A stretch of DNA of 59,429 bases, filler included, from Sluysia triapertura (GCA_046118255.1; 4 parts of 4 records of this genome joined end to end with filler, not necessarily neighbours in it); one strand, 5' to 3'; shown: positions 32,069-47,736, numbered from the whole stretch's first letter. Translations and numbers: made by a program. The notes: generated by a model from the letters alone, not told the origin.

Positions 32069-32110
<42 letters not shown>
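32069..32110. repeat. (TA)n microsatellite at a contig start
   Basis: About 21 units. Confidence 0.95.
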
Positions 32111-32113
<3 letters not shown>

Positions 32114-35100
32114 TTTTTATTTAGAGATAAGATAAATACGCACTGATGGTTATCACACTGATGCATCGTTATTAATTCCTCAAATAAACATTGGATAGTT
32201 TGTATAAGCAATGAAGTTTAAGTTGGTATTATTTTTTGTCTATTTTATACGATATTTCATTATATGTATTCCCAAATATTGTAAAATACAGTCAAGACAT
32301 AATACAACAAATTGGTGGAGAAAAACTAAGTGTGGTAAGTGCACATCCATTATTATGGTATTGTAATATTATATCATTAATATTTTTATTATATACTAAT
32401 TTTACTAAAATAATTTCAGATGTTTATTTTGTTTTAACTTTGTACATTTATTAAATTATATAAATGCATTATATATCTTTCAGTTGAAAACATATTTTTG
32501 AAAATAATTTTTTAATCGTAAAAATTATATTTTTTATACTTAAAATGCATAAATGTTAATTTTAGTTATAAAAAATTGATTGTAAACTCAATTTCTTCTG
32601 GAAAAAATCGGTCTTTAAGGCATTACAATTTTCAAGTTCTTAGGATAATATCAATGTTACAAACATTATTTTACCACAAAATTTTAATGAATAATCCCTT
32701 CCTAAGGCAAGTTGTAGTTCAAAAAATAAAAATGTCAAGATGTATGCATTACTTATGATATCACTTTTGCTAAAGAGATTAATGCTAAATTATTTAGCTA
32801 ATGAAAATTATGAAATAAAATTAAAAATTGGCACAATTGAAAGTAGCTCAAATAAAAATTTAAAAATAGATTTTTCATAAATTTATATTAAAAAATTAAT
32901 AAATAATGTCAGAAAAAATTTATGATAATAACACTTTTAACTGCATGTATTACATTTAACTAAAAATTCCATTTGTCACATACAGTGTTTGTCCAGTGAA
33001 ATGTTAATGGGCACTGAAGTAGCCAATTTACATTTGATTGGATTGTCATTAGATACAAGTTTTTTATTTCAGTTGTAATAGTCTTGGCGAATTAAATTGT
33101 TTAATTTTTTTAACTGCATACAGCAGTTGCGTAATAATTTATGTACTATTACTAATAATAAATTATTACCCAAGTAGTTGATTTTTAGTCACATTGTTAT
33201 TATTATTATTATAAGTATTAGTATTATGCTAATTTAATTTAAGCCTAAATTTTTTATTTTTTCTAACTCATGATTCTTAACCTTTCCTTGGAAAACAGTA
33301 TATTTATAAAAACGTAACATAATAAATTAATTAATACTAGAGTGGAGCATGTATGGAGTTATGCAATGATTTAATACTATTTGTAGTGTTAGTGTTTAAA
33401 ATGTTTGATTACGTAACGTGATTGAGAGTTTTAACATATCGAATGTAAGAAAGACTGAAATTCAGTAATATAGTTTGAGAATTTTGTAATTATATTATGA
33501 GCTGATTTTGTAACAAAATCAGATGTAATGGCCACAACAATATAAATCTTAGATATTAGAATTTGGTATTTCCAAATAAAAGTTACAATTTATATTAATT
33601 CGGAAAATTAATCTGAGTTTAAATAGGATCTAAATTACAATGTTCGAAACTTTTTTATTTTTAACCAATATCTGTCTAAATTCGAATTTTTGAACGAAAT
33701 GTTTCCACATTATTGTTTTACACCAGAAAATAACATTACTGACACCACTTCAATTTTTTCATTTTTTGCTGCACTAATATAATTTTAGCTATTTCAGATA
33801 GCAGTCATATGCGTTAATTTTTTAATGAAAATGTGAAATGATTATTAATGTGAGAATGAAACAAATTAAAACAAATATTTAATATTTAAAGTAAAGTCCA
33901 AATAAACTAAACTATCTTAACAACCTAGGTAAAGAAATAACTGAAATTAAGAAATAAATATCGTAAGAAAACATGCGAATGTTTAGAACATTTACGCCTC
34001 ACGTATTTAACAAATAGAGAAATCTATGAATAAAACAGAAGCACGATAAACATGATAAAATAAATACAAGGAAGAACTCAAACGAACCGAAATACACAAA
34101 AACACATCCTCGTAATTAAAAGAACCATCTAAAATCACTCTTAAGCAACGGAATACAAAAAGAAAAAAATCTGTCACACTTAATTAACACACAAAATCAA
34201 ATGTGAAAGTTTTTGTAAATAAAAACAAACAAGTACAAATGAATACTAACTAATACAGGGCGGATATAATTTACTATATAGAATGCAATTACTACAAAGT
34301 AACTTATAAAAAAAGATATATAGTAAAAAATACATAATAAAACACAAAAAAATCTGTTAGTGTGAATTTTAAATCAAATAAGTGTTAAAATCATTTTTCT
34401 ATATCATTTGTCACCCTGATAAAGAAAATGCACCAAAAACAACTTTCTAATTTAATTTAAAAATGCACATAATAAACATGATTGACGCAAATGTGTATAT
34501 GATTACTGCAACTGTCCATGTGAAATACATTTTTAAGCTGCTCATTTACAGCTAACAGTTTAAGAAGCATGGCTCGAAGTGAACTTATTCGTGTTGCGAA
34601 AATTGCGGATAAATTTCAATCGGCATTAGATTTGCTTATATTAATAATTATTTTATTTAATTATCTAACAGATTAAGGAAATTTAATTTTTTTCACCAAG
34701 TCCGAATCGATTGTTGGTCAGTGCTTTATCATCAAGATTAATAATATTTTAATTTTTATATAATCCCACAAAAATGAGAACACAAGCAGAATCGTTTTTC
34801 AAAAGTAACTATATTTTAAAGTAATTAATCATTAAATAATTTCAAAACAAATATTTAAAATTGACAGAAGGAAACATTATAATTAAGTTATGTAAAGCTG
34901 ACATAACTATTGATAGTATCATTAATATGGTGATTTTGATATCATTGATTTGGGTTCAATGTAAAGGCATCGATTGGGAAATAAGCAGTCGTCGCTTTAA
35001 CTATACACTATTTTGATTAGTGACCTGGACTAGTAGATGTTTGCATCATTTACTGATACAGAGATTCTGCTTATCACCTTGCCAACTGGAATGTATGAAT

Positions 35101-35515
35101 ATTTTAAAAGAAACAGACAAGAATAAAAGTCAAAATCGAACACTTTCACAGCAGTAAAGATCGAATTCCAACACAGAAATATAAATATTAAATTTCAACA
35201 AAATTGATACTGAAAAATAATTAAATGCATGACTTTTAACATTATTGGAGAAAAGGAGTCACAACAGCAGATGCATATAGAATATCTGGTGTTGCCAATA
35301 TAACACTGTTACAACAAAATTGTAGAAGGTTTAATGATTGATGTTTAGAACTTAAAGCCACAGGTGATTCCGATCATTCCGGCATCACATAATTTTCTTG
35401 AAACAAATTAAATTCAAAGTATGTGAACAATACCAAGTAAGCTCCAGTTCAGCGTATTTAGGAATTTTCAAATCGTTAGGAAAAATTAATGTTGCACGGG
35501 ACATCAAATAAAACA

Positions 35516-36894
35516 TTACATATTTGTAATTATTTCATAGAATACCTAAATAATGTGCGACTTTTTAAATGGATTGCTACTAGTGAAAAAGTTGAGTATA
35601 TGAAAAAATGATGAAGTAAAGGTAAAATTGGTCTACTTTTCGTTAAAAAGGTCGTGATTTACGTTTCTTGGAATTTTGAAGATATCCAAAGTTAGTCAAC
35701 AATAGTTTTACTTTAATTATGACATGTGAAACAAACTCAATTTTACTGTCTTTCACTTCTTCAAGCTTTTTTTAATACTGTCACAAATAAAATGCTTCTT
35801 AAGGAAAAACGCATATTAAAATTCTTCAAATTTTAAGTCTGAATATTAAAAAATAAATTACCTTAAACTTTTTTCGAAAAGAACCATAACTTCTAGTGCC
35901 TATTACAGATGATAAAATTGGTATTTTGAATTCATCAGCAATTGATAGAATTTTGCTTTGTTGATTAACATTCTCCGTAGATTTTGCTTTCCGTCGAAAG
36001 GACATAAAGCTAGATGATTGTGTTCTATAAAACGTACTATACATAGTACAATATGCGATTTGAGTAGCTTTGAAATGATCGTCATTTATAGATTCCTAAA
36101 ATTATCATTTAATTTAATTTATAATTTACAATGTAAAGCAACACAATAAGTTAAATTAAAAATTTATTAAATTTATAATTTACGAGTTATTAGTAATATT
36201 GAATATTAAAGAATTGTATTATACGAGTTGATGTGTATAATATAGAAAATCTTTGTAATATCTGATACCAATTTAACATAAAGCGAAAAATATTAGTACT
36301 GATGGATAACAATAAATGATGCATATATATTTATTTTTATCATTTAAAAGCATTTTCTTCCAATACAATAAGATATTTTAGTCGTATTGCAAATTTGGCA
36401 AACGTAAGATTGTTTTAATTTTTGTATCAAAGTTGCATTTTAAATTAAATGGAATTATCACAGCCATTTCTTCGAAATCAAACAATCCTTTAAATTAAAT
36501 CTCAATGTGTAAAATGACTATCGTCTTGGAAGCTCTTAAAAAAAGTCCAGAAATAGGAAATGAAGCTAATTCAAAAGAGACGTATATATTATTATATTTT
36601 GTATTATATTGTGTAATTTGAATATTAATCATAATATCGATTGGTATAAAATTTACAGTCATCATCATTCACCTTCAAATGAAGAAAAGCATGAATAACT
36701 CACCATTTCCATGTAAAATACGAATATTGTATTATTTATGAAAATATTTTAATTTGATCAACAAAATAATTCATGATTTTAAATACATAAATAATTACTT
36801 TATTTTTCTGATTAAATAATTCAAATGTTTTGTATAATTTAGTCAGCCCAATATCTTCATTCTTTAAAGTATTGATATTGATCGAAACTATCGT

Positions 36895-36926
<32 letters not shown>

Positions 36927-39900
36927 CCTACAAAGTATAACACTTTCTTTAATCGAAGCGATAAATTTAGTGATCCTTCCTATAACTGCTATCTTAGCAT
37001 CATCAAATATCGTATCCACGAGATCATCATTTTGTAATCGATTCATAACATCACTCAGTAATGCATCATCAAGGTTACATATAATTGGCTAAATGTAATC
37101 ATGTATAAATTTTGTTAAAATATGATATATTATAAGTTTTGTTAGTGCATTGAAAATTGAAATTATATTGTAACTCATCAACTTACCATTTAAGAACAAA
37201 TTTAAATATGTTTATAACACAAATTTAATTTGTCTTATAATATTATATTTCAAACTATAACTATGTGGTACATTGATTAAGTTCTTGTATCAGACAATAA
37301 AACACATAATAAAATATTTTAACGCAATATATTATTTATATATATTTATTATTTATCAACATAAACAACCATTTCCAGCGTTCAACTTAATCGAGAAAAT
37401 TTTTGAAATGTTCGTCCAAGAAATTGTTCACGTTCTACATTAGATCGTCAATGCTTCCTAAGGTATCGAAAGAGGTACAAATCCGGACTCTAACCACTGT
37501 CATTGATTTATACCATTTGTGAACAATATTTCCCATTTTTTTCCGAATACTTCATATTTGTTCACCAAGGTTCTTTAGTTTGAGTAGTTGATGCAAGCAC
37601 ATTTTCGATAGAATTCTATAATTAAAGACTGATGAACTGCCCTTCTTAAACTGACTTATCCAATCACATTCAATCACGTAACTTCTCTTAGCCCAAATAT
37701 AACAAAAAACATTATTATGGTCAGATGTTAAATAATGCAGCATCACGTTACTAAATTTGAAAAACACCCAGTAATCAATAAATGATGTATTTAAATAAAC
37801 TATATTTACAATACCTTGCAATGTTTTACACTAGTAAATAATATTCTTCATTCCAGTCTAGTTCAGGTGCTTCCACAACTGAAATTTAAATTGTCAGCAA
37901 AATATATGTAAAATATTAAAATTAGTTTTAATTCTTACTATCGAGCTAGTGATAATTTATCAATAAATATTTTTTATATTTTATAAGTTTTTCTAAGGCT
38001 TAGAAATTAGTGGATATAAGAAATATTTACCAATTATTTTACCAAGTATAATTGAATATGTTAGATCAAAATTTTCTTTTTAATAATGCTTTTAAATGAA
38101 TATTAGAATATCTAGTATAAATATTGACAAAACTGAGAATTAAATTCAAGCACTAAAGAATTTTGTTTAATGCAATATTGAATGAATTAGCATGTAGAAA
38201 AAATGTCACAGTTAATTTCTATAAAAGCAATAATTATATATTTAATCCTATTCATTGAATGTGCATATCTGTCCCGCATTAAAGTAAAACATTTTTGGAT
38301 AGAAATAATAAAATTTAATTTCAAAATCACAAAACATTATATAAATACTTACAGAATTAGGATGTAAAAACATTGTAATCACTTCATTAGCCATTCGATG
38401 AATATCACCAAATCTTCCGCGAGATCGTTGCGTTTCATAATTTTTGATAGCGAAGTAAAGGAAGAAACAATTTAGAATTTCATCTTTGGATTTTGCAATT
38501 TCAATCAAAGAAGCTACCATTCCAGGACTTTCTAACGATTTTTCAGTATCTGTTAGCAAATCAATTACCATATTACTTTCATCAACTTTTACATTCACCA
38601 CTCCCTCATCATCTTCAAAATCTCTACCATAATATGGTGAATTCTTATTCTTCTTTTTCGTTACTTCATTAACATTAGTTGTAGTATTCTTAACATTACC
38701 ATTCGCTTGTAAATTATTTTCATTCTTTAATGAAATAATCGAAGTTGATGTAATAATATTGGCATTAATATTATTATTGTCATCAGAGGTTACTACAGAT
38801 TCTTTCGGAATAGGAGTCTCATACTGTTTAACATTGTTATCCAATTCAGTTCTTGTGGCAAGCAATGTAATTTTCTGTTGGAAAAGTACATATTATTTAT
38901 TTAATTAAGACAAATTTCAAACAAAATACAAAATTAAGCATTACTCATAAGCATTTATTATAATAAAGATAATTATAAAAAAAAGATTAAATTTGAAATA
39001 TTTTTAATTAAATTATTTTAAAATATTTTTCAATCATTTTACTAAAATTAACAATTAGCATCTTAACAAGAATTAATATTATTTTATGAGATTTTACTGC
39101 AATTATGGGGAATATTCTTTTTAAAAACGATCTTTTTAAAACTCTAAAATAATTGTACAAAATACAAGGAGCAATTTATTAAATGATTTTGCTTATAATG
39201 AAAGTATTAATCAATTTCATCTTACCTAAGGTTAGGAAAATCGAAGTGTGGTTTACCTAAACTTGCAATTAATATTGTACGTAATGATATTAGTGATAGT
39301 GATACAATTGATATCATTATTCATTATAAAAATTAAACTATTAGTTAAAGATGTTTAAGTTCTCTAAACTCTGGAAAAATGACTTTTCTAAAAAGACTTA
39401 TAATAAAATAAGACACAAAATTAAAAATTATTCTAATTCGAATGATAAAATATGTGTTAGTTTTAAAATAGGTTAAGTTAGGACACACTCAGTTTTAATT
39501 TTCAGTCTTTAGTCATATTGCTCATAATAACAGGTATAAATTAAATGAACCTATTCGTTTGTACTGCTCTAAAAATCATCAGATAAATCTTATCCGAATA
39601 AAAAATGAACTGTTCTATAATGAATAAATTGTGTCAAAAGTCGTAATAATTATTATAAACGTCAAAATGTGTAGAAATAAAGATAAATTCTAATTCTAAA
39701 TCAAAAAACTTAAATCTTAAAAATTCCAAAAATGATTAAATTTGGTATGCAAAATGTTAGGTCTGTTAAAGAAATGGCCACATTATTGATATAAATGAAA
39801 CGCGCAGTTGGTGGTGTGTTAGATGAGAAACTAAAGGTACGGAATATAGGATGCTATATGGATTTAAAAATGAACATGGAAGAAAATATTAATTGTATTA

Positions 39901-42079
39901 TAAAAAAGTATAAATACCAATTAAAGAAAATATCAAATATTCGAAAATTTATTAATAAAGACGGGATAAAACTAATATTCATTCATTGATAATTAGTAAT
40001 ATAGATTTTAATAATGATATATTCTACTCAATTTCATACAGAATAATCTAAACATAGCAATTACTATTGAATCAAACATCAAAATAATTTTACAAGCAGA
40101 TCTCACGTACACTTTACATTGATGAATTATACTAGTTATCAATAAAATCAAGAGTAGAATTCAAATTCGTGTCAAAAATATATAAATGCTTACATTATGG
40201 AAGTCTTGACCATTTCTTAGAAATAATAAAATGAAGAAACCTGTTGTAAAAAAAACTGTTACTTATTATGTTCAAGTTATGCAGCACGTTTCATGTAACA
40301 ACCAACCTCTGATGAACATAAAGACTTTGATTACCACAATTAATTCGATAAAGCAAGAATGTGGTGAATTATTAAAGAAAAGTGAATGATTAAATCTAAA
40401 TATAATGCATTTAACTGATTATAATGCGTGTAGAGACCACTGTTCGAATTACTAAACTTAGAAATTTTGATGCCGACACTATTTCAGCAACTCCTAGTCC
40501 AATTGTGTTGATGCTACATCGTAAGAATCTAATTAGAGAAATATTTTATTATATTCAACATTTAGCAATGGATGAGGCAGATAAAATGATAAGTTGTCAA
40601 TTAACCCTAAACAGCGATTAAGCTCTACGAATTCTACCATCCGAATAATGAGGAAAAAGATAAAAAGAATAATAAAGAGTTTTAGAAAATCACAAATAAT
40701 GAACTTTTCAGAATTAAGAAATACATATGATGCAGAAGATGTTTTTACGAATTTAAAATTTAATGAATTGAAAATCTTTTATTTCTATCATCATAGAATT
40801 GGCTTTAGTTCGTCAAGCTTTAAAATGTATTACAAAACGGCTCTTTGCCCATATGCAACAAATCAATATGGGAAATGCAAAAGATTTGGCCTAAATTGCA
40901 AATACTTCCTTGCAATTAATGAATTAGAAGAGTTTCATGTCGACCCAGCAGTCCGATCGGCACACTACAGTAGGATAACCCATTTATTCACAGATATAAG
41001 TACAAAAGCTGCCAAAACTACAGTCAACAGTCCTACAATTCAATGATCAGGCGTAAAATTTCTCAACAATGAAGTAATCATTCCTTATAATTACATTGAA
41101 GATCTTTTAGTTGTATGTTTTCATTTAGTTTGTGAAACCTGGTCCGGAGGAAGATATATACAGAAATTAAATTTTTTTAACGTTAACATTTTTAATTCTA
41201 GTATTATGAATAAATTTTTCGTTGTTTACAAATTGTTATTTCTTTTCAATAAACTTAAAATCTTATTACTTGTAATGATCATAACAAAATATAAATTTAA
41301 TTTACAATTTGCTAACAAAAAATTAAATTTTAATACAATAATTAAGTTTTTAATGACCCCAATTGTAATTAATAACATTTACAACATTAAAAACTTACAA
41401 TTATTATTATTTAATATTATTATATTATCATTTTAATTTGTCTCTTAGTTTTATAACTTCATTATGAAGGTTTCATTTTGATTTCGCTTAACTTTTTAAC
41501 TTTTTAAATTATTTTCATTATTTTTATTTTGTTGATTTTATTTTCTCATATTACTATTATTGCAATAGCACAATAGCATACAATAGCACACCGAAATGTT
41601 AAAATTAATATTTCAGCAGATGCTTCAAAAATTACAAAAATATGAAAAGAATAAATAATAAGTTGTACTAACAACTGGTGCATTGTATGAATATGATTTA
41701 ACAGGTGGATCTAAAACTTCAGTATCATTCGATATTTGGTCGACTTTCTTCACATATTTTTTATGACTAACTACAATATCATCATCAGTTCTTGATTTGC
41801 TTTGCTGAATACGTTCATCTGACGAAGAAGTTATATTGTTTTGATCAGTATGTTCATTACTACTACTACTACTAGTAGAAGAAAATGATGTAGAATCACT
41901 TGAATTTTTAATTGGTTTCAATTGAGTGAACGTGATTTCTTTTGAGTGAGACTTCAATACGTTTTGATTTAAATTATTATTACCACTGGAATCAGATTTC
42001 TGAACGGATATGTTATGCATCAATGGCAATTTTATATTAAATTCGATAATGTCACCAATTGATATTTGATTAAACATAA
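35516..42079 (-). CDS. RGS-domain protein, 5'-partial; exons 42079-41673, 38874-38353, 37088-36944, 36887-36799, 36095-35862, and a possible terminal exon 35545-35516
   Basis: The exons chain in compatible phases with GT-AG ends. An RGS-like box spans the 38353/37088 junction: EILNCFFLYFAIKNYE...MANEVITMFLHPNS|PIICNLDDALLSDVMNRLQNDDLVDTIFDDAKIAV (compare RGS E.L.FW...Y...A..I...FI...SP..INID...FD.AQ). The terminal exon and subfamily are uncertain. Confidence 0.7.
39830..40200 (+). mobile_element. Non-LTR retrotransposon (L2/CR1 group) ORF2 C-terminal remnant
   Basis: KVRNIGCYMDLKMNMEENINCIIKKYKYQLKKISNIRKFI...IISNIDF...LSIKSRVEFK...IYKCLH matches the L2-type RT thumb/C-terminus (VRNLGV.FD...HI...L..I..IR.Y...RLDY...LP..RI.FK..YK.LH). 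Confidence 0.8.
40424..41160 (+). pseudogene. Cassette ORF-H copy C: best-preserved DEAD motif plus CCCH finger, antisense in an RGS-gene intron
   Basis: DTISATPSPIVLML...IQHLAMDEADKMI (motifs Ib/Ic and II), then YYKTALC-PYATNQYGK-C-KRFGLN-C-KYFL with His lost. Downstream SAHYSRITHL and NEVIIPYNY match copy B ASHRNRLNDL and NKVIIVYKF. Confidence 0.75.
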
Positions 42080-42599
42080 CTAGATATATTTAATAAAATA
42101 AATTTTAAATGTAATTTGTAATCTCAAATAATGATGTAATATTTTCCTTTATAATATATATTTTTGTTTTATTTACGTGTTTATTAAATTTTTATTTTTA
42201 GCTCTACAAGCTGAAAAAATTATTTTTATTTATTCATTCAACAAAAATAATAACAATAATGAATTCCAACTGCAGAATTGATTTAATTCAATTAAAAATC
42301 AATATTCACATTAAATAAACATTTAAAGATTTTTAAAAATCTAGCGGTTAATATGAATGTTTCGATTAATAAAACATACAAGAGGTCGAAATGCGTGTAT
42401 TTATTTTATTACTGCTACAACTTGGAAATATGTATTCAAATAAAGTAAAATAAAAAATTAGCTTACTCGTTCTGAGAATTGTACGTGAACAAAATAAAAT
42501 ATAATCAGTTATGTGTTCATTAAAATTAAAATGTTTAAAACCCAAACAATCACTTCAAATTTGACACAAATTACTATTTAAACTTATGACAGTAGTAAT

Positions 42600-43110
42600 A
42601 AAAGTATATAATGTTGGACTAATAACAATATAGAATATGGTGGCCAACCTTTTCACTTAAAATTTAAAGTAATTTTTTATCACTAACATTTTACATTTAT
42701 TTTCTCAGATTTGCTAAAACCTTTCGACATTTAAAACACCTTAAATTCATAATCTTACAACATCAAAATTACATTTTCATCCAAACCATCAATGCACATT
42801 TCAAATTTCATTCAAAACAATCTTAACTCACAATTTTACAACATTCGAATCACAATCTACATCTTAAATTATCACAGAAAATGTTAAAAATTAACCCAAA
42901 ATATTTCAACTCTACAATCCTTTAATACTCAATCTTTTATATCATCGAAAAACATTAAATCCACAGTTTAATACTACTACAAACTTTGCAATCAAATCAT
43001 ATTTCTGTAACATTGTTATTCATGTGCTACTTACTTTAAACATTCTTTCAGTAATTCTATTTACATCCCATCTCTTTCACCATAAAATACAACCTCTTTC
43101 AAAGAATTTT
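42600..43110 (-). pseudogene. Cassette partner ORF-P copy E
   Basis: Nucleotide and peptide similarity to 9890-10050; lies head-to-head with 43668-44720. Confidence 0.6.
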
Positions 43111-43294
43111 AGTTATCTGTTAAAACTTTGTATGTTAGAAAAAGAAAAATAATGTAAAACAAAAGAAATAAGTTTATGCACTTTACTTTAATCTCAATTT
43201 TATTTGTATTATTATTTTTTTTCATGCTATCATTATTTTTTAATATATCATTATTACTATTATACGGTTAGTACCAAAAATTTTAATTTATTTT

Positions 43295-43570
43295 CTGTCA
43301 CCATTTTACTTTTCTGAATTATTAGCTTTTAAAACTGCATGGTGACAGGCATGCATCTGAAATATTACAGACACTTAATTGAATCACTTGACTCATTTCT
43401 CATTCGTCAATTAACTCTTACTCCTTTTTACAGCCACAATCGTTCTTTCATTAGATACTCAATCAGGGTTATTCCTCACAAACTGAGTCTATTTTAGTCT
43501 GATTGGACGCCCAATCAATATCATTTTTGTAAGTCTCATTATCTCTATAAATGGACGTCCAATCACGAGC
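43295..43570. promoter_or_regulatory. Candidate bidirectional promoter/spacer of cassette E
   Basis: Inverted pair TGTCACCA...TGGTGACA, TTCGTCAATTAA, palindromic TGATTGG-ACGC-CCAATCA (43500-43517) and a second TGGACGTCCAATCA. Confidence 0.45.
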
Positions 43571-43667
43571 CGTAAAAGAAAACAAAATTTAATTGGCAAT
43601 AAATAAAATAATGACAAGTTAAAAGATTATACAGATTAATACAATTTGTTAATAAATTTTAAAAATA

Positions 43668-44720
43668 ATGTCCTCACATATTGACGATGTTTATGCAGAA
43701 CAAATTCAATCAGTAAATAAAACTATAATTTCAGCTACAATAAAATTTCAAAAAAAGTTTATTGTATTTAAGACTTTAAAAGATATACGAGACTCATTAA
43801 TAACATTTCATACGAGTCAACCTTATATGTAGGAATACGAAAATAATTCAGATATTGTGGAATTCACTCTATACCGATTTTTAAATTCTAAATTAAACAA
43901 AAATATTCGTTATGCTTAAAGCATGATTGTGCACGATATGAATCATCAGCTCATTCATAAAATGAGATTATCGACTATTTATTCGAATACAAATCAGATG
44001 GAGTCCGTCCATGCAAAAAGTGATAAACTACAAAGCATCAATATTCTGAAAAACCACGTACAACATATTTTTTAATGAAGCTGATGTAAAATTTAAAGTT
44101 TTGTTAATAGATAGTCCTATGAATATTTGTAATTATTTAAATTATAAAGAAATCGTTGTTTTATCTAAATATAGACTATTTTATGAAATATTGTGGGTAA
44201 TTTCTATAAGGAAAGATAGTTACAAAAGTTTTGGAGAATTACCTATAAGAATGATACATACTGGTATTGGTAATGTTCTAACTATAAGTATGATCTTATA
44301 TAATTCTATGACAATAATTGATAAAATAATTCCCTACAATGTTTTTCCTCAATTAGAATCAATAGAATATAAAAAAGTATAGATGGATGTTTAAAGAACG
44401 ATCTATAGTATCTACAACTTTTGAAACTACGAATATTACTTCTTACCTTAATAAAGAATTTTTAGATAAATATAATTATACAAAAGATAAATTCATGACA
44501 GTGACCACTTTTCACTCTTATCCAAATTCATATTATGCTTATTTGTTTCATGATGATTCGACTTTCTAGATTTGTGGCAACCTATTATGATCCTTCAATA
44601 ATCACATCTCTAATCGACAGAAATACTATCTATTTCGGTCAGGACAATGTTGCAACGGGGAAGATCTTGCCAAAACTTCCATAATATTCAAGAAATATGT
44701 TGCGTTAATTATGACGGTCA
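43668..44720 (+). pseudogene. Cassette ORF-H copy E
   Basis: Chain of broken ORFs from ATG 43668, with VLLIDSPMNICNYLN (Ib/Ic-like). Ends in Q-KYYLFRSGQ-C, a frameshift, then LQRGRS-C-QNF-H-NIQEI, the same x9/x6/x3 spacing. Confidence 0.6.
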
Positions 44721-44973
44721 CGTAACACTCAAATTCTTAAATTTAAGTAATAGTAGTAGCTTAACTACTTACATTTATTATTCTACTCATCAAATTCATA
44801 GTAGTCATTTTCATCATATTCACCATCATCATCATCATGAAAAATATCATCTTCATCATTACATTTATTTCCTTCACAATCAATTTTATTATCTTCATCA
44901 CTTATTTGGTGATATCTTCGTCGTCATCGTATTAGTCATTGTAGACATGTATTCATAAACTTCATCATTACCG

Positions 44974-45045
<72 letters not shown>
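44974..45045. repeat. (CAT)n microsatellite
   Basis: About 24 units. Confidence 0.95.
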
Positions 45046-45046
<1 letters not shown>

Positions 45047-45568
45047 TAGAATGCCGAAGAAACTTCAAGAAATTCGAAATTTTTTAAAAACAATTATTGT
45101 AGCTTAAGGTGTTTATATGATTCTTTAATAATATTTTAATTGCATTACAAAAAAGCAAACAAATTAGCATACTATGACTTTCAAAGATTGTTTATTAATT
45201 ATAGAATTTTTTACTAAATAATATCTTTACTATTTTACTTAATTTTAAAAAAGGTATGATAAAATTATTCAATTTTTATGCTTTACATTACAAGTAATAA
45301 TTATTTTCAGTTAATATTTTAATTAATAATAAATGAAATTTAATACAATTTAGAATAATTTAATTATAAATTATTATTTGAAATTAAAACAATTATTAAA
45401 TTCAAATATTATATTTTGATAAATAATGGTAAATAATTTATCGAATATCAAAATAAAAATATTTTTCAAGAGGCAGTCAATTATTATTATGATAAAAATG
45501 TAATGTATTAAAAGTTTACTAAAATAATAATAAAAGTTTATTAAAATATAAGATAATAATATAATATA

Positions 45569-45614
<46 letters not shown>

Positions 45615-47736
45615 TCCACTAGACATCATTATGTGGTCAAATCATAAGTTAATATAATAAAAATATAGTAAATAGTAACATGGCTAAATCCAATATGCAG
45701 CTAAGTTAGGTATAATAAACTAATTTGTATATAAAATATGATAAGAATAGGTTTTACAATAAGTACAACTAGGTAAACACAGCGATTACTATGGCAATAA
45801 TAAAAATACTTGTGAGAAGTAGTATATAAAGGCACAATTAATTATTTAAGAAAGTATATTTGGTTTATATTGGACAAGTTATTGTGGCATTCAATATTCA
45901 AATATTTAATTCAAGTGCTTACACATTCGAAGTAACAAAATTGATATTTGTATTAATAAGATTAGTGAAATAAATAATGAACCAGTATTTAAATACTAAG
46001 CAAAATAATTAAAGGTAAGTTTTGTCCTAAAATCTTGAAGATAAATAGCATGAATCTATATTTGCTTGTTCTTTATTTTTACTCAGTTTCATTTTACTTG
46101 CATCCTTCAATCAGGAGAGATCGAATCCCGACATTTAATTATGTAAGAGGTAAACTTATTCATAATATTACGAATTTGTGATTGAAATATAAATTATGAC
46201 AAATACATAATTATATTAATAAACTATTATTATTAACAAATGTATATTAATAATCAGCCATAATAATGGTATGGAGCTCAATTTTAACATTGTTGTAGTA
46301 CGATAAAGAAAACTTACTAACTTATTATTTTTATTTTAAGAAAATTATTCTATTATTATTATAATGAAAACAAAATGTAAAATTATAAATATCAATAACG
46401 TGATTTAGAAGTAATCGTTTAAAAATTGCACAAAAAACACTAATTAAGCACAAAAGCACATAGGTATGAGAAACACAAAAATGCAAAAGGAGCAAAAGTA
46501 GAAGCAACATGTCAGTAAGTGATGATGAGCTTACTTCTCTGATCACAGACTAAAATGAGATTCTTTTTCTTAGTGTTAAATTATACATGGATTTAGCTGG
46601 ATTAATATACATCTTGATCATCAGAATCAGAAATTTTTCAAATATCGTAATTGTTGCAATGCAAGCAGTAGAGTGAGTAGACGAAATTAATATCAAAGAC
46701 CATAAAAGAAGTTATGAGTAATTGTGTCAATCGCAAAACATATGTAATTAAATATAATTAAAAGATATTGTGTAATAGATATTTTATGAAGTAATAAAAA
46801 AGCAGAAATAAAAAATTTGGAACACAAAACAAATAATAATATAAATTATCATGATGCATATGCAATACACAAATAATTATTAATTCTGAAAGTATTAAAA
46901 ATTCAACATAGACAATAAGAAACAGATTATTACTAAAAGATAATAGTTTATGACTAAAAATGCTAATTGTAATCTTTTCCTAAATAATTATTTAAACAAT
47001 CTTAGCGGTCATTACGAAAATTTTCTATCTATTTTTATAAATTTGAAAAAAATTATAACTAAAAAACAAGTTTTCCATAGCAAAGAGGATTTCAAATTAA
47101 ATCTATTATGCACATATAAAAATATATGTGTATATATGGCAATACAATGTCAATACTTATACTGTACAGGAATTATTAAACTTGAGCATGTGTGTGTTAA
47201 CGTCTTTCGATACCAAAATAATTTTTTAATAATATAATTATTTTTAAATTGATAAGCCAGTGTAAAAGAGATAGACGCGGACAAGCTTGACAATCTAATC
47301 TAAATTTTAAATAGAATCAAGTATTTGCAATTTATCGAAAGTTAGCCAAAGATTGAAGACTTGGTCTTATTCTTGAAAGAATCTGCTAATTAAACAAATA
47401 AATTTGATAATGGATCGTGCGGCATTTTCTGAAAAACGACCAATTTGAGTTATTCAGTAAAGTTGAAAGAGCCAACCACAACATTTTCTATTCAAAGACA
47501 AAATAGTGATACTTTGACTAAACCCGAAAGCTTGTAGATAGTGGGCAAAAGATCATGCGTTTTAATTTGAAAAATAGTTTCTTTTGAATAAATTCTTGCA
47601 TAAAAATCATTATTTTAAATCATTATCTTCACCTTAGCAATTTTTATTTTTATGTATAGTAAACAAAAAAATTGGCTAAAATCATTCTATTATAGATAGA
47701 GATCAGTAACAAATCCTAATTAACATCAAAAGAATA

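What the first reader, a model, noticed from the sequence alone, without database searches (positions are those of the whole stretch)
40424..41160. True DEAD motif followed closely by a CCCH finger, with no room for the second RecA domain
Seen: ATPS...IQHLAMDEADKMI lies only about 240 nt upstream of YYKTALC...C...C. Copies B and E also show no recognisable motifs IV-VI between the motif II region and the finger. Established: active DEAD-box helicases need both RecA domains, and a (Y/F)KTxLC lead-in typifies TIS11-type RNA-binding CCCH fingers. Inference: the family encodes a truncated, probably catalytically dead helicase domain fused to an RNA-binding finger, perhaps a decoy or adaptor in RNA silencing or mRNA control.
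Basis: partly seen in the sequence, partly recalled or inferred. Interest (0 to 1): 0.75.

Follow-up and report, generated by a model that had tools for sequence, protein, structure and literature searches.

The report
Decayed DEAD-stub plus CCCH-finger repeat copy
A short relic of a DEAD-box helicase sits next to an Unkempt-like zinc-finger relic in a repeat present in tens of copies, but this copy is broken, lies inside another gene's intron and cannot make the proposed protein.

Summary
ATPS...LAMDEADKMI (40487-40591) lies 246 nt upstream of YYKTALC-x9-C-x6-C (40828-40899). No helicase motif I, Ia, III or IV-VI is detectable in any frame.

The two parts are in different reading frames. The finger has Leu where the zinc-binding His should be. 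Its spacing is Unkempt-type, not TIS11-type.

The segment of about 40210-41545 is a dispersed repeat with tens of copies at 80% identity or more. Here it lies antisense in a 2.8-kb GT..AG intron of a minus-strand gene, beside a repeat present about 18,000 times. An 82%-identical copy is collinear across the DEAD-to-finger junction, so the short spacing is a family trait. It is neither a local deletion nor two insertions.

The finger frame (40585-41433, 283 codons) is interrupted only by one TGA. That stop, and a Cys-to-Tyr change, are private to this copy, and open frames this long are not expected by chance (P <= 0.0005). The unit was therefore coding until recently.

No relative was found in 1.84 billion proteins, and no RNA data exist.

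Verdict: this is a recently disabled copy of a chimeric gene-fragment ORF family. A functional decoy helicase is not supported for this copy and remains open for the family.

The parts
40210..41545 (+). Approximate extent of the moderately repeated unit, the DEAD-stub/CCCH family. The coding-like core 40424-41150 has 32-33% GC. The tail 41151-41545 has 15% GC.
   Evidence: summed contig depth is about 100-1100 here, against about 14-21 for single-copy contigs. Between 9 and 28 contigs cover each listed site. Depth falls to 42-160 from 41546, and the very-high-copy repeat ends near 40209. One search gives the GC values. The ends are approximate, and the AT-rich tail may attract low-complexity matches.
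40415..40618 (+). A 68-codon open stretch in frame 0 (ATG at 40424) carrying DEAD-box motif Ib (ATPS for TPGR, 40487-40498) and motif II (DEAD, 40571-40582).
   Evidence: Searches give the sequence. Pfam DEAD E=0.023, model positions 85-131 of 167. Atlas: 28 of 30 nearest clusters are DEAD. Shuffle test.
40585..41043 (+). A 153-codon open stretch in frame 2. It overlaps the DEAD stretch by 34 nt (40585-40618). It holds a basic stretch (MRKKIKRIIKSFRK from the ATG at 40648) and two finger relics.
   Evidence: An open run of this length has P<=0.0005 in shuffles.
40726..40791 (+). Relic of an upstream finger: Y-x10-F-x5-F-x3-H. The first position is Cys in at least 94% of the depth of other copies (40727 A>G). 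The His at 40789 lies 18 residues before the next finger's first Cys.
   Evidence: codons. table 3 (40727 A>G, 718 of 766, 20 contigs). The Unkempt alignment starts at FYHH = FLHR. Treating the two Phe as former Cys is inference.
40828..40911 (+). YYKTALC lead-in and a finger C-x9-C-x6-C-x3-L. The cysteines are at 40846, 40876 and 40897. Leu (CTT) stands at 40909-40911 in the His position.
   Evidence: Pfam zf-CCCH_UNK E=4e-6, 27.1 bits, cut-off 31.1. Unkempt 5elh E=0.009 with identical C-x9-C-x6-C-x3 spacing. TTP E=0.91 and needs two gaps.
41044..41046 (+). A TGA stop private to this copy. It is the only stop within the 283-codon frame 40585-41433.
   Evidence: table 3: 41044 T>C in 190 of 206 depth, 9 contigs, which gives CGA.
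41047..41433 (+). A 129-codon continuation of the same frame. The first 35 codons have 33% GC. The rest is an Asn/Ile/Phe/Lys/Leu-rich tail.
   Evidence: An open run of 129 codons has P<=0.0005 in shuffles of 41047-41545. No Pfam family matched.
39576..40209 (+). Very-high-copy interspersed repeat directly upstream. It is not part of the family.
   Evidence: depth 17,000-354,000, up to about 18,000 times single copy. Many contigs end at 39961, 40043 and 40209. The ORF 39795-39986 looks to me like the C-terminal tail of a non-LTR reverse transcriptase. That is unverified: Pfam and the word search were blank.
38875..41672 (-). A 2,798-nt intron of a minus-strand host gene (GTTAGT...TTTTCCAACAG on the minus strand). 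It contains the whole finding in antisense orientation.
   Evidence: table 5: one contig joins 38874 to 41673, with skipped ends CT..AC on the plus strand. Searches show the splice sites. The exon frames match (405 nt from the ATG at 42077; 38874 is in frame with the 214-codon open piece).
41673..42077 (-). Host gene first coding exon (135 codons from the ATG, Ser/Asn-rich).
   Evidence: No Pfam family matched.
38251..38874 (-). Host gene second exon (208 codons, running to a stop).
   Evidence: No Pfam family and no homologue were found.

Best explanation
This is one recently disabled copy of a dispersed unit of about 1-1.3 kb, present in tens of copies in the same genome. Here it lies antisense in an intron of a minus-strand gene, among much more abundant repeats.

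The unit is a chimera of two exon-sized gene relics. One is about 55 residues of a DEAD-box RecA1 domain (motifs Ib and II only). The other is an Unkempt-type CCCH finger pair. The finger pair is followed by about 175 further codons of the same reading frame.

Shown: the unit is repeated. The DEAD-to-finger junction is shared by a copy about 18% diverged. The finger frame is open for 283 codons except for one stop private to this copy. This copy also carries a private Cys-to-Tyr change and has the two parts in different frames.

Inferred: the two relics were joined once, by capture or retro-copying of host gene pieces. The unit then spread while its main frame was still open, and this copy has since drifted neutrally.

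At this locus the unit does nothing as a protein. The stub could never act as a helicase, because it has no P-loop, no motif III and no second RecA domain. If an intact member exists, its active part would be the CCCH fingers.
For: - Repeat status and extent: tables 2, 3 and 8 (depth about 340-1090 against about 19; 9-28 contigs per listed site).
- Collinear diverged copies: records 4-6 cover 40443-40754, 40781-41069 and 41064-41372 at 82-84% identity, with only 2-5 gaps each.
- Private defects of this copy: 41044 T>C removes the stop and 40727 A>G gives Cys in the others.
- Of the 14 near-unanimous differences in 40424-41046, 10 change the residue, 2 are silent, 1 is the stop and 1 lies between the parts. 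That is a neutral-looking pattern (my reading).
- Former coding: open runs of 153 and 129 codons in one frame, P<=0.0005 each, and 283 codons never reached in 2000 shuffles.
- DEAD-box origin of the stub.
- Unkempt-type finger.
- No Helicase_C or other helicase motifs.
- Intron setting.
Against: - The other copies could not be read. Only a summary of differences was available, so it is not shown whether any member is intact, whether its frames are joined, or whether selection acts.
- No terminal repeats, target duplications or poly(A) tail define the unit as a mobile element, so how it spread is unknown.
- The DEAD match is below every curated threshold.
- The long open frame could mean the family is a working gene family and not debris.
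Confidence: 0.6

Rival explanations
1. The family is a living, lineage-specific gene family, or a mobile-element gene. Its intact members would encode a small protein with an N-terminal DEAD-box relic, a basic linker and CCCH fingers. The fingers would bind RNA. The relic could at most be a protein-contact surface.
For: The 283-codon frame is broken only by a private stop. The frame-0 DEAD stretch and the frame-2 stretch overlap by 34 nt, so one 1-nt indel would merge them. Alternatively, a GT..AG interval 40593-40711 would splice them in frame. The five best-supported indels shown inside the unit (40248, 40419, 40422, 40673, 41271) all lie outside the DEAD stretch 40424-40592 and the finger stretch 40712-41046 (table 4).
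Against: The Leu at the His position and the two Phe at expected Cys positions are not among the differences carried by at least 89% of the other copies' depth. At least some other copies therefore share these defects (table 3). No similar protein exists among 1.84 billion representatives or in the word index. No RNA run holds the stretch. Two contigs carry an AA insertion at 40673 inside the frame.
Confidence: 0.22
2. Only the CCCH part is gene-derived. The ATPS...DEAD resemblance is a chance pattern in an open stretch upstream of it.
For: Pfam DEAD E=0.02-0.03 and 14.8 bits, below the 26-bit cut-off. With 114 open pieces in this piece, a few such scores are expected. DDX41 scores E=1.9. The upstream piece 40210-40386 shows no helicase signal.
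Against: Motif Ib and motif II occur in the right order and spacing with the right hydrophobic context, and this pattern appeared in 0 of 3000 shuffles. 28 of the 30 nearest atlas clusters are DEAD-box fragments at 0.94. GC content is 32.5%, as in the coding-like core.
Confidence: 0.1
3. This very locus is an expressed, spliced nested gene. It would run from the ATG at 40424, through an intron at 40593-40711, to the stop at 41044, giving a 167-residue protein.
For: GT at 40593 and TTTTCAG ending at 40711 would join the two frames in phase.
Against: The zinc ligands are lost (Tyr for Cys, Leu for His). The stop is private and truncates the family frame. The changes private to this copy look neutral. 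GT and AG pairs in phase are common in AT-rich DNA. There is no RNA evidence.
Confidence: 0.04

Closest known systems
Unkempt (UNK) CCCH zinc-finger RNA-binding proteins; Pfam PF25427, structure 5elh
   Same: Shares the YYKT-x2-C lead-in, the unusual C-x9-C-x6-C-x3 spacing, and a preceding (F/Y)-x-H end of another finger 18-19 residues upstream. It is the best Pfam and best solved-structure match.
   Different: Only about 45-65 residues match, and the score is below Pfam's cut-off. The His ligand is Leu, and the upstream finger has Tyr/Phe/Phe where Cys is expected. No further fingers and no RING domain are present. No significant hit appeared in the 1.84-billion-protein search.
DEAD-box RNA helicases (Pfam PF00270 + PF00271), e.g. 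DDX41
   Same: Shares motif Ib (ATPS for TPGR) and motif II with its context (L-A-M-DEAD-K-M-I) at the usual spacing. DDX41 was the only solved chain reported.
   Different: Motifs Q, I (P-loop), Ia and III and the whole second RecA domain (IV-VI) are absent. The match is about 55 residues and the score is under the cut-off. This is a relic, not a helicase.
TIS11/ZFP36 (tristetraprolin) tandem CCCH fingers
   Same: Shares the (R/K)YKTELC-like lead-in and an 18-residue spacer between the two fingers.
   Different: The TIS11 spacing is C-x8-C-x5-C-x3-H, and the alignment to TTP needs two gaps and scores E=0.91. Pfam zf-CCCH (PF00642) gave no hit.
Repeats carrying captured host-gene fragments, and chimeric retrocopies (Pack-MULE-, Helitron- or LINE-transduction-type; named from my own knowledge)
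   Same: Exon-sized pieces of two unrelated genes lie side by side, multiplied to tens of copies, in an intron next to abundant repeats.
   Different: No terminal inverted repeats, target-site duplications, hairpin or poly(A) end were found. The carrier, if any, is not identified. The long recently open frame is unusual for such debris.

Membership tests
DEAD-box helicase | Motif II (D-E-A-D) in its hydrophobic context | tested here: met
   LAMDEADKMI at 40562-40591. The context pattern occurred in 0 of 3000 shuffles.
DEAD-box helicase | Motif Ib (TPGR) about 20-25 residues before motif II | tested here: inconclusive
   ATPSP stands 24 residues before DEAD, and Gly-Arg is replaced by Ser-Pro. 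It aligns to ATPGR of DDX41.
DEAD-box helicase | Q motif, motif I (P-loop AxxGxGKT) and motif Ia (PTRELA) upstream | tested here: not met
   The open frame begins at 40415, after a stop. The upstream piece 40210-40386 has no DEAD hit in Pfam at E<=10 and no atlas hit.
DEAD-box helicase | Motif III (SAT) and the second RecA domain (Helicase_C, motifs IV-VI) | tested here: not met
   No PF00271 hit in any open piece of 40415-41433 on either strand. Only 246 nt separate DEAD from the finger. An 82%-identical copy has the same spacing.
DEAD-box helicase | Pfam DEAD at or above the gathering score | tested here: not met
   14.6-14.8 bits against a cut-off of 26.
Unkempt-type CCCH finger (PF25427) | C-x9-C-x6-C-x3-H spacing with a YYKT lead-in | tested here: inconclusive
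   The three Cys and the lead-in are present with exactly the spacing of Unkempt in 5elh. The fourth ligand is Leu, not His.
Unkempt-type CCCH finger (PF25427) | Pfam score at or above the gathering score | tested here: not met
   25.6-27.1 bits against a cut-off of 31.1, with E=4e-6 to 1.2e-5.
TIS11/ZFP36 tandem zinc finger | Two C-x8-C-x5-C-x3-H fingers, each with a (R/K)YKTELC lead-in, 18 residues apart | tested here: not met
   The spacing is x9 and x6. Only one lead-in is present. TTP scores E=0.91 with gaps. There is no PF00642 hit. The 18-residue spacer is present.
Mobile element carrying captured gene fragments | Defined ends (terminal repeats, target duplications or a poly(A) tail) | tested here: not met
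   Only AT-rich low-complexity matches were found. The ends are known only from depth.
Mobile element carrying captured gene fragments | Many dispersed copies sharing the same internal junction | tested here: met
   Tens of copies exist, and a diverged copy is collinear over the junction. The loci of the other copies were not seen.

The most novel reading that the evidence does not exclude
Intact members of this family encode a small protein in which a P-loop-less relic of a DEAD-box RecA1 domain is fused to Unkempt-type CCCH fingers. It would be kept by selection in tens of copies as an RNA-binding adaptor or decoy, possibly mobile-element-borne. No detectable relative exists in 1.84 billion proteins.
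Probability: 0.1. Interest if true: 0.6.

Novelty: new member of a known kind. Interest (0 to 1): 0.3.

Why it matters
As it stands this is an ordinary outcome. It is a decaying copy of a chimeric gene-fragment repeat in a repeat-rich intron of an AT-rich eukaryote. The DEAD motif is a relic and not a sign of a helicase.

Two things keep it from being pure debris. The 283-codon frame was open until very recently. The DEAD-to-finger junction is shared across copies that differ by about 18%.

If intact members exist, the family would be a lineage-restricted CCCH RNA-binding protein born by exon shuffling. That would be a clean case for studying how new RNA-binding genes arise and spread. It can be tested directly on the full assembly.

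Tried and rejected
- Word-index protein searches found nothing for the finger ORF, the host exon or the reverse-transcriptase-like ORF.
- The exhaustive phmmer of the 153-residue finger piece found nothing at E<=0.001.
- Exact-sequence look-ups of two ORFs found no contig.
- Viral and metagenome contig scans found no relative. This counts against a viral origin only for close relatives.
- Only one sequencing run holds the stretch, coded and not on record as RNA. Expression and the organism's name therefore remain unknown.
- Rfam, tRNA and tandem-repeat scans found nothing relevant.
- No second copy of the unit exists within the piece, by blastn and tblastx.
- No terminal inverted or direct repeats bound the unit.
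- A codon log-odds test trained on the two host exons did not separate candidates from open non-coding controls, so I do not use it.
- Two literature searches found no description of a DEAD-stub/Unkempt-finger fusion or of a repeat carrying both.
- Not done: structure prediction. The pieces are short and decayed, have no alignment, and may not be joined across the breaks, so a model would not be informative.
- Not done: a phylogeny of the stub against host DDX genes. No host proteome was reachable and 55 residues are too few.
No consensus of copies was built.

Full report
**Setting.** The piece (32069-47736) has about 24% G+C, many trinucleotide runs and very few long open frames. The organism could not be named. 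The one public run that holds the stretch is coded and is not on record as RNA. No ORF of the piece found a relative.

**Check of the observation.** Frame 0 is open for 68 codons (40415-40618). It reads ...DADTISATPSPIVLMLHRKNLIREIFYYIQHLAMDEADKMIS....
- Pfam aligns this to positions 85-131 of the 167-position DEAD model, at E=0.023 and 14.8 bits against a cut-off of 26.
- The only solved chain reported is DDX41. There ATPGR...LALDEADRMI aligns with ATPSP...LAMDEADKMI, at E=1.9.
- These scores alone are not significant, given 114 open pieces in the sequence.
- However, the DEAD tetrapeptide is expected 0.009 times per piece. The combined motif Ib/motif II pattern never arose in 3000 second-order Markov shuffles.
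- A language-model search put 28 of the 30 nearest clusters among DEAD-box fragments.
- I accept the stretch as DEAD-box-derived, at about 90%.

Frame 2 is open for 153 codons (40585-41043). It holds YYKTALCPYATNQYGKCKRFGLNCKYFL (40828-40911).
- Pfam zf-CCCH_UNK scores E=4e-6.
- Mouse Unkempt (5elh) scores E=0.009, with the same C-x9-C-x6-C-x3 spacing and the same 18-19-residue distance to a preceding F-x-H.
- Tristetraprolin needs two gaps and scores E=0.91. The classical zf-CCCH model does not hit.
- The finger is therefore Unkempt-type, not TIS11-type.
- Its fourth ligand is Leu (CTT, 40909-40911).
- Upstream, Y-x10-F-x5-F-x3-H (40726-40791) looks like a second, more decayed finger.

No Helicase_C, no motif III and no P-loop appear in any open piece on either strand. 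The two parts are in different frames. The finger lacks its His. The helicase part is about 55 residues, not a domain.

**What surrounds it.** Laying the contigs of the one holding run at 80% likeness or more gave single-copy contigs at depth 14-21.
- 39576-40209 has depth 17,000-354,000. This is an interspersed repeat with up to about 18,000 copies. Its ORF 39795-39986 reminds me of a non-LTR reverse-transcriptase tail, which is unverified.
- About 40210-41545 has depth 100-1100, with 9-28 contigs per listed site. This is the family of the finding, in tens of copies.
- 41546-42530 is close to single copy.
- 42531-43121 is another repeat.

One contig joins 38874 to 41673. The skipped 2,798 nt begin CT and end AC, which is GT..AG on the minus strand, with GTTAGT and TTTTCCAACAG at the ends. 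The join keeps the frame between two minus-strand open pieces (42077-41673 and 38874-38251). The whole finding therefore lies antisense inside an intron of a 343-codon, Ser/Asn-rich gene of unknown family.

**Is the arrangement a family trait?** Yes. Contigs of other copies, 82-84% identical, lie collinearly on 40443-40754, 40781-41069 and 41064-41372, with only 2-5 gaps each (table 8). The first of these spans the DEAD codons, the spacer and the start of the finger region. The lack of a second RecA domain is not a deletion peculiar to this locus. The two parts did not arrive here by separate insertions.

**Was it coding?** The 153-codon piece and the next 129-codon piece (41047-41433) are in the same frame, separated only by TGA at 41044-41046. 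In nine other contigs (190 of 206 depth) that codon is CGA. Open runs of 129 or 153 codons were reached in at most 1 of 2000 shuffles of the region. A run of 283 codons was never reached. With the two host exons, these are the four longest open pieces of the whole 15.7 kb. The frame was therefore under coding constraint until shortly before this copy diverged.

Differences carried by at least 89% of the other copies' depth mark changes private to this copy. There are fourteen in 40424-41046:
- ten change the residue, among them Cys to Tyr at 40727, a presumed zinc ligand;
- two are silent;
- one makes the stop;
- one lies between the two parts.

That is what neutral drift looks like. The Leu at the His position and the two Phe are not in that list, so at least some other copies share them. 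Whether the family's fingers are still intact is thus unknown.

**Relation of the two parts.** The frame-0 and frame-2 open stretches overlap by 34 nt (40585-40618), so a single 1-nt indel would merge them. Alternatively, GT at 40593 and TTTTCAG ending at 40711 would splice them in phase. Neither could be tested, because the other copies could not be read base by base and no RNA run is available.

**Explanation.** The most likely reading (0.6) is a chimera of two exon-sized host-gene relics plus further open frame. It would have been assembled once and multiplied to tens of copies. This copy is a freshly disabled, functionless member lodged in an intron.
- The stub cannot be a helicase in any member, because it lacks ATP-binding and RNA-binding motifs.
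- How the unit spreads is not shown. No terminal repeats, target duplications or poly(A) tail were found.
- Smaller rivals are a chance DEAD pattern (0.10) and an expressed spliced gene at this very locus (0.04).

**Comparison and novelty.** The finger part is nearest to Unkempt and the stub to DEAD-box proteins. Neither passes its family's curated threshold, and several defining features fail (see the membership table). I found no described fusion of the two and no relative in 1.84 billion proteins, in viral contigs or in metagenomes. As a kind of thing, a multiplied chimeric gene-fragment ORF or pseudogene, it is known. This is a new member of that kind. Interest is modest unless intact members turn up.

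Noticed in passing
window 38251-38874 (-), 41673-42077 (-), intron 38875-41672: A two-exon minus-strand gene of 343 codons (Ser/Asn-rich, with no Pfam family and no homologue) has a canonical GT..AG intron of 2,798 nt. One contig of the holding run carries the intron-less joined form at depth 43, about twice the single-copy depth. The genome may therefore hold an intron-less retrocopy, or the run may contain cDNA.
   Followed up: partly
window 39576-40209 (peak 39773-39969): An interspersed repeat at up to about 18,000 times single-copy depth. Its 64-codon ORF (39795-39986) looks like the C-terminal tail of a non-LTR reverse transcriptase. Pfam and the word search gave nothing, so the class is unverified.
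   Followed up: partly
window 39182-39378 and 42531-43121: Two further repeats, at roughly 1,000 times and 100-300 times single-copy depth. They are unrelated to the finding and of unknown class.
   Followed up: no
window 40767-40788 and 41095-41116: A 22-nt direct repeat (86% identical, 328 nt apart) links the end of the upstream finger relic (ELKIFYFYH) to IEDLLVVCFH in the continuation of the frame. It may be the trace of a third finger module or of an internal duplication, or it may be chance.
   Followed up: no
window 44962-45046 and 44614-44955: A (TCA)28 microsatellite reads as a poly-Asp run on the minus strand. It is preceded by a 114-codon open piece with a His-rich run on the plus strand. 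Whether either is an exon is unknown.
   Followed up: no
window 40419-40422: Most other copies lack 1-2 bases just upstream of the ATG at 40424 (52-79% of depth). The start of the DEAD stretch therefore differs between copies.
   Followed up: no
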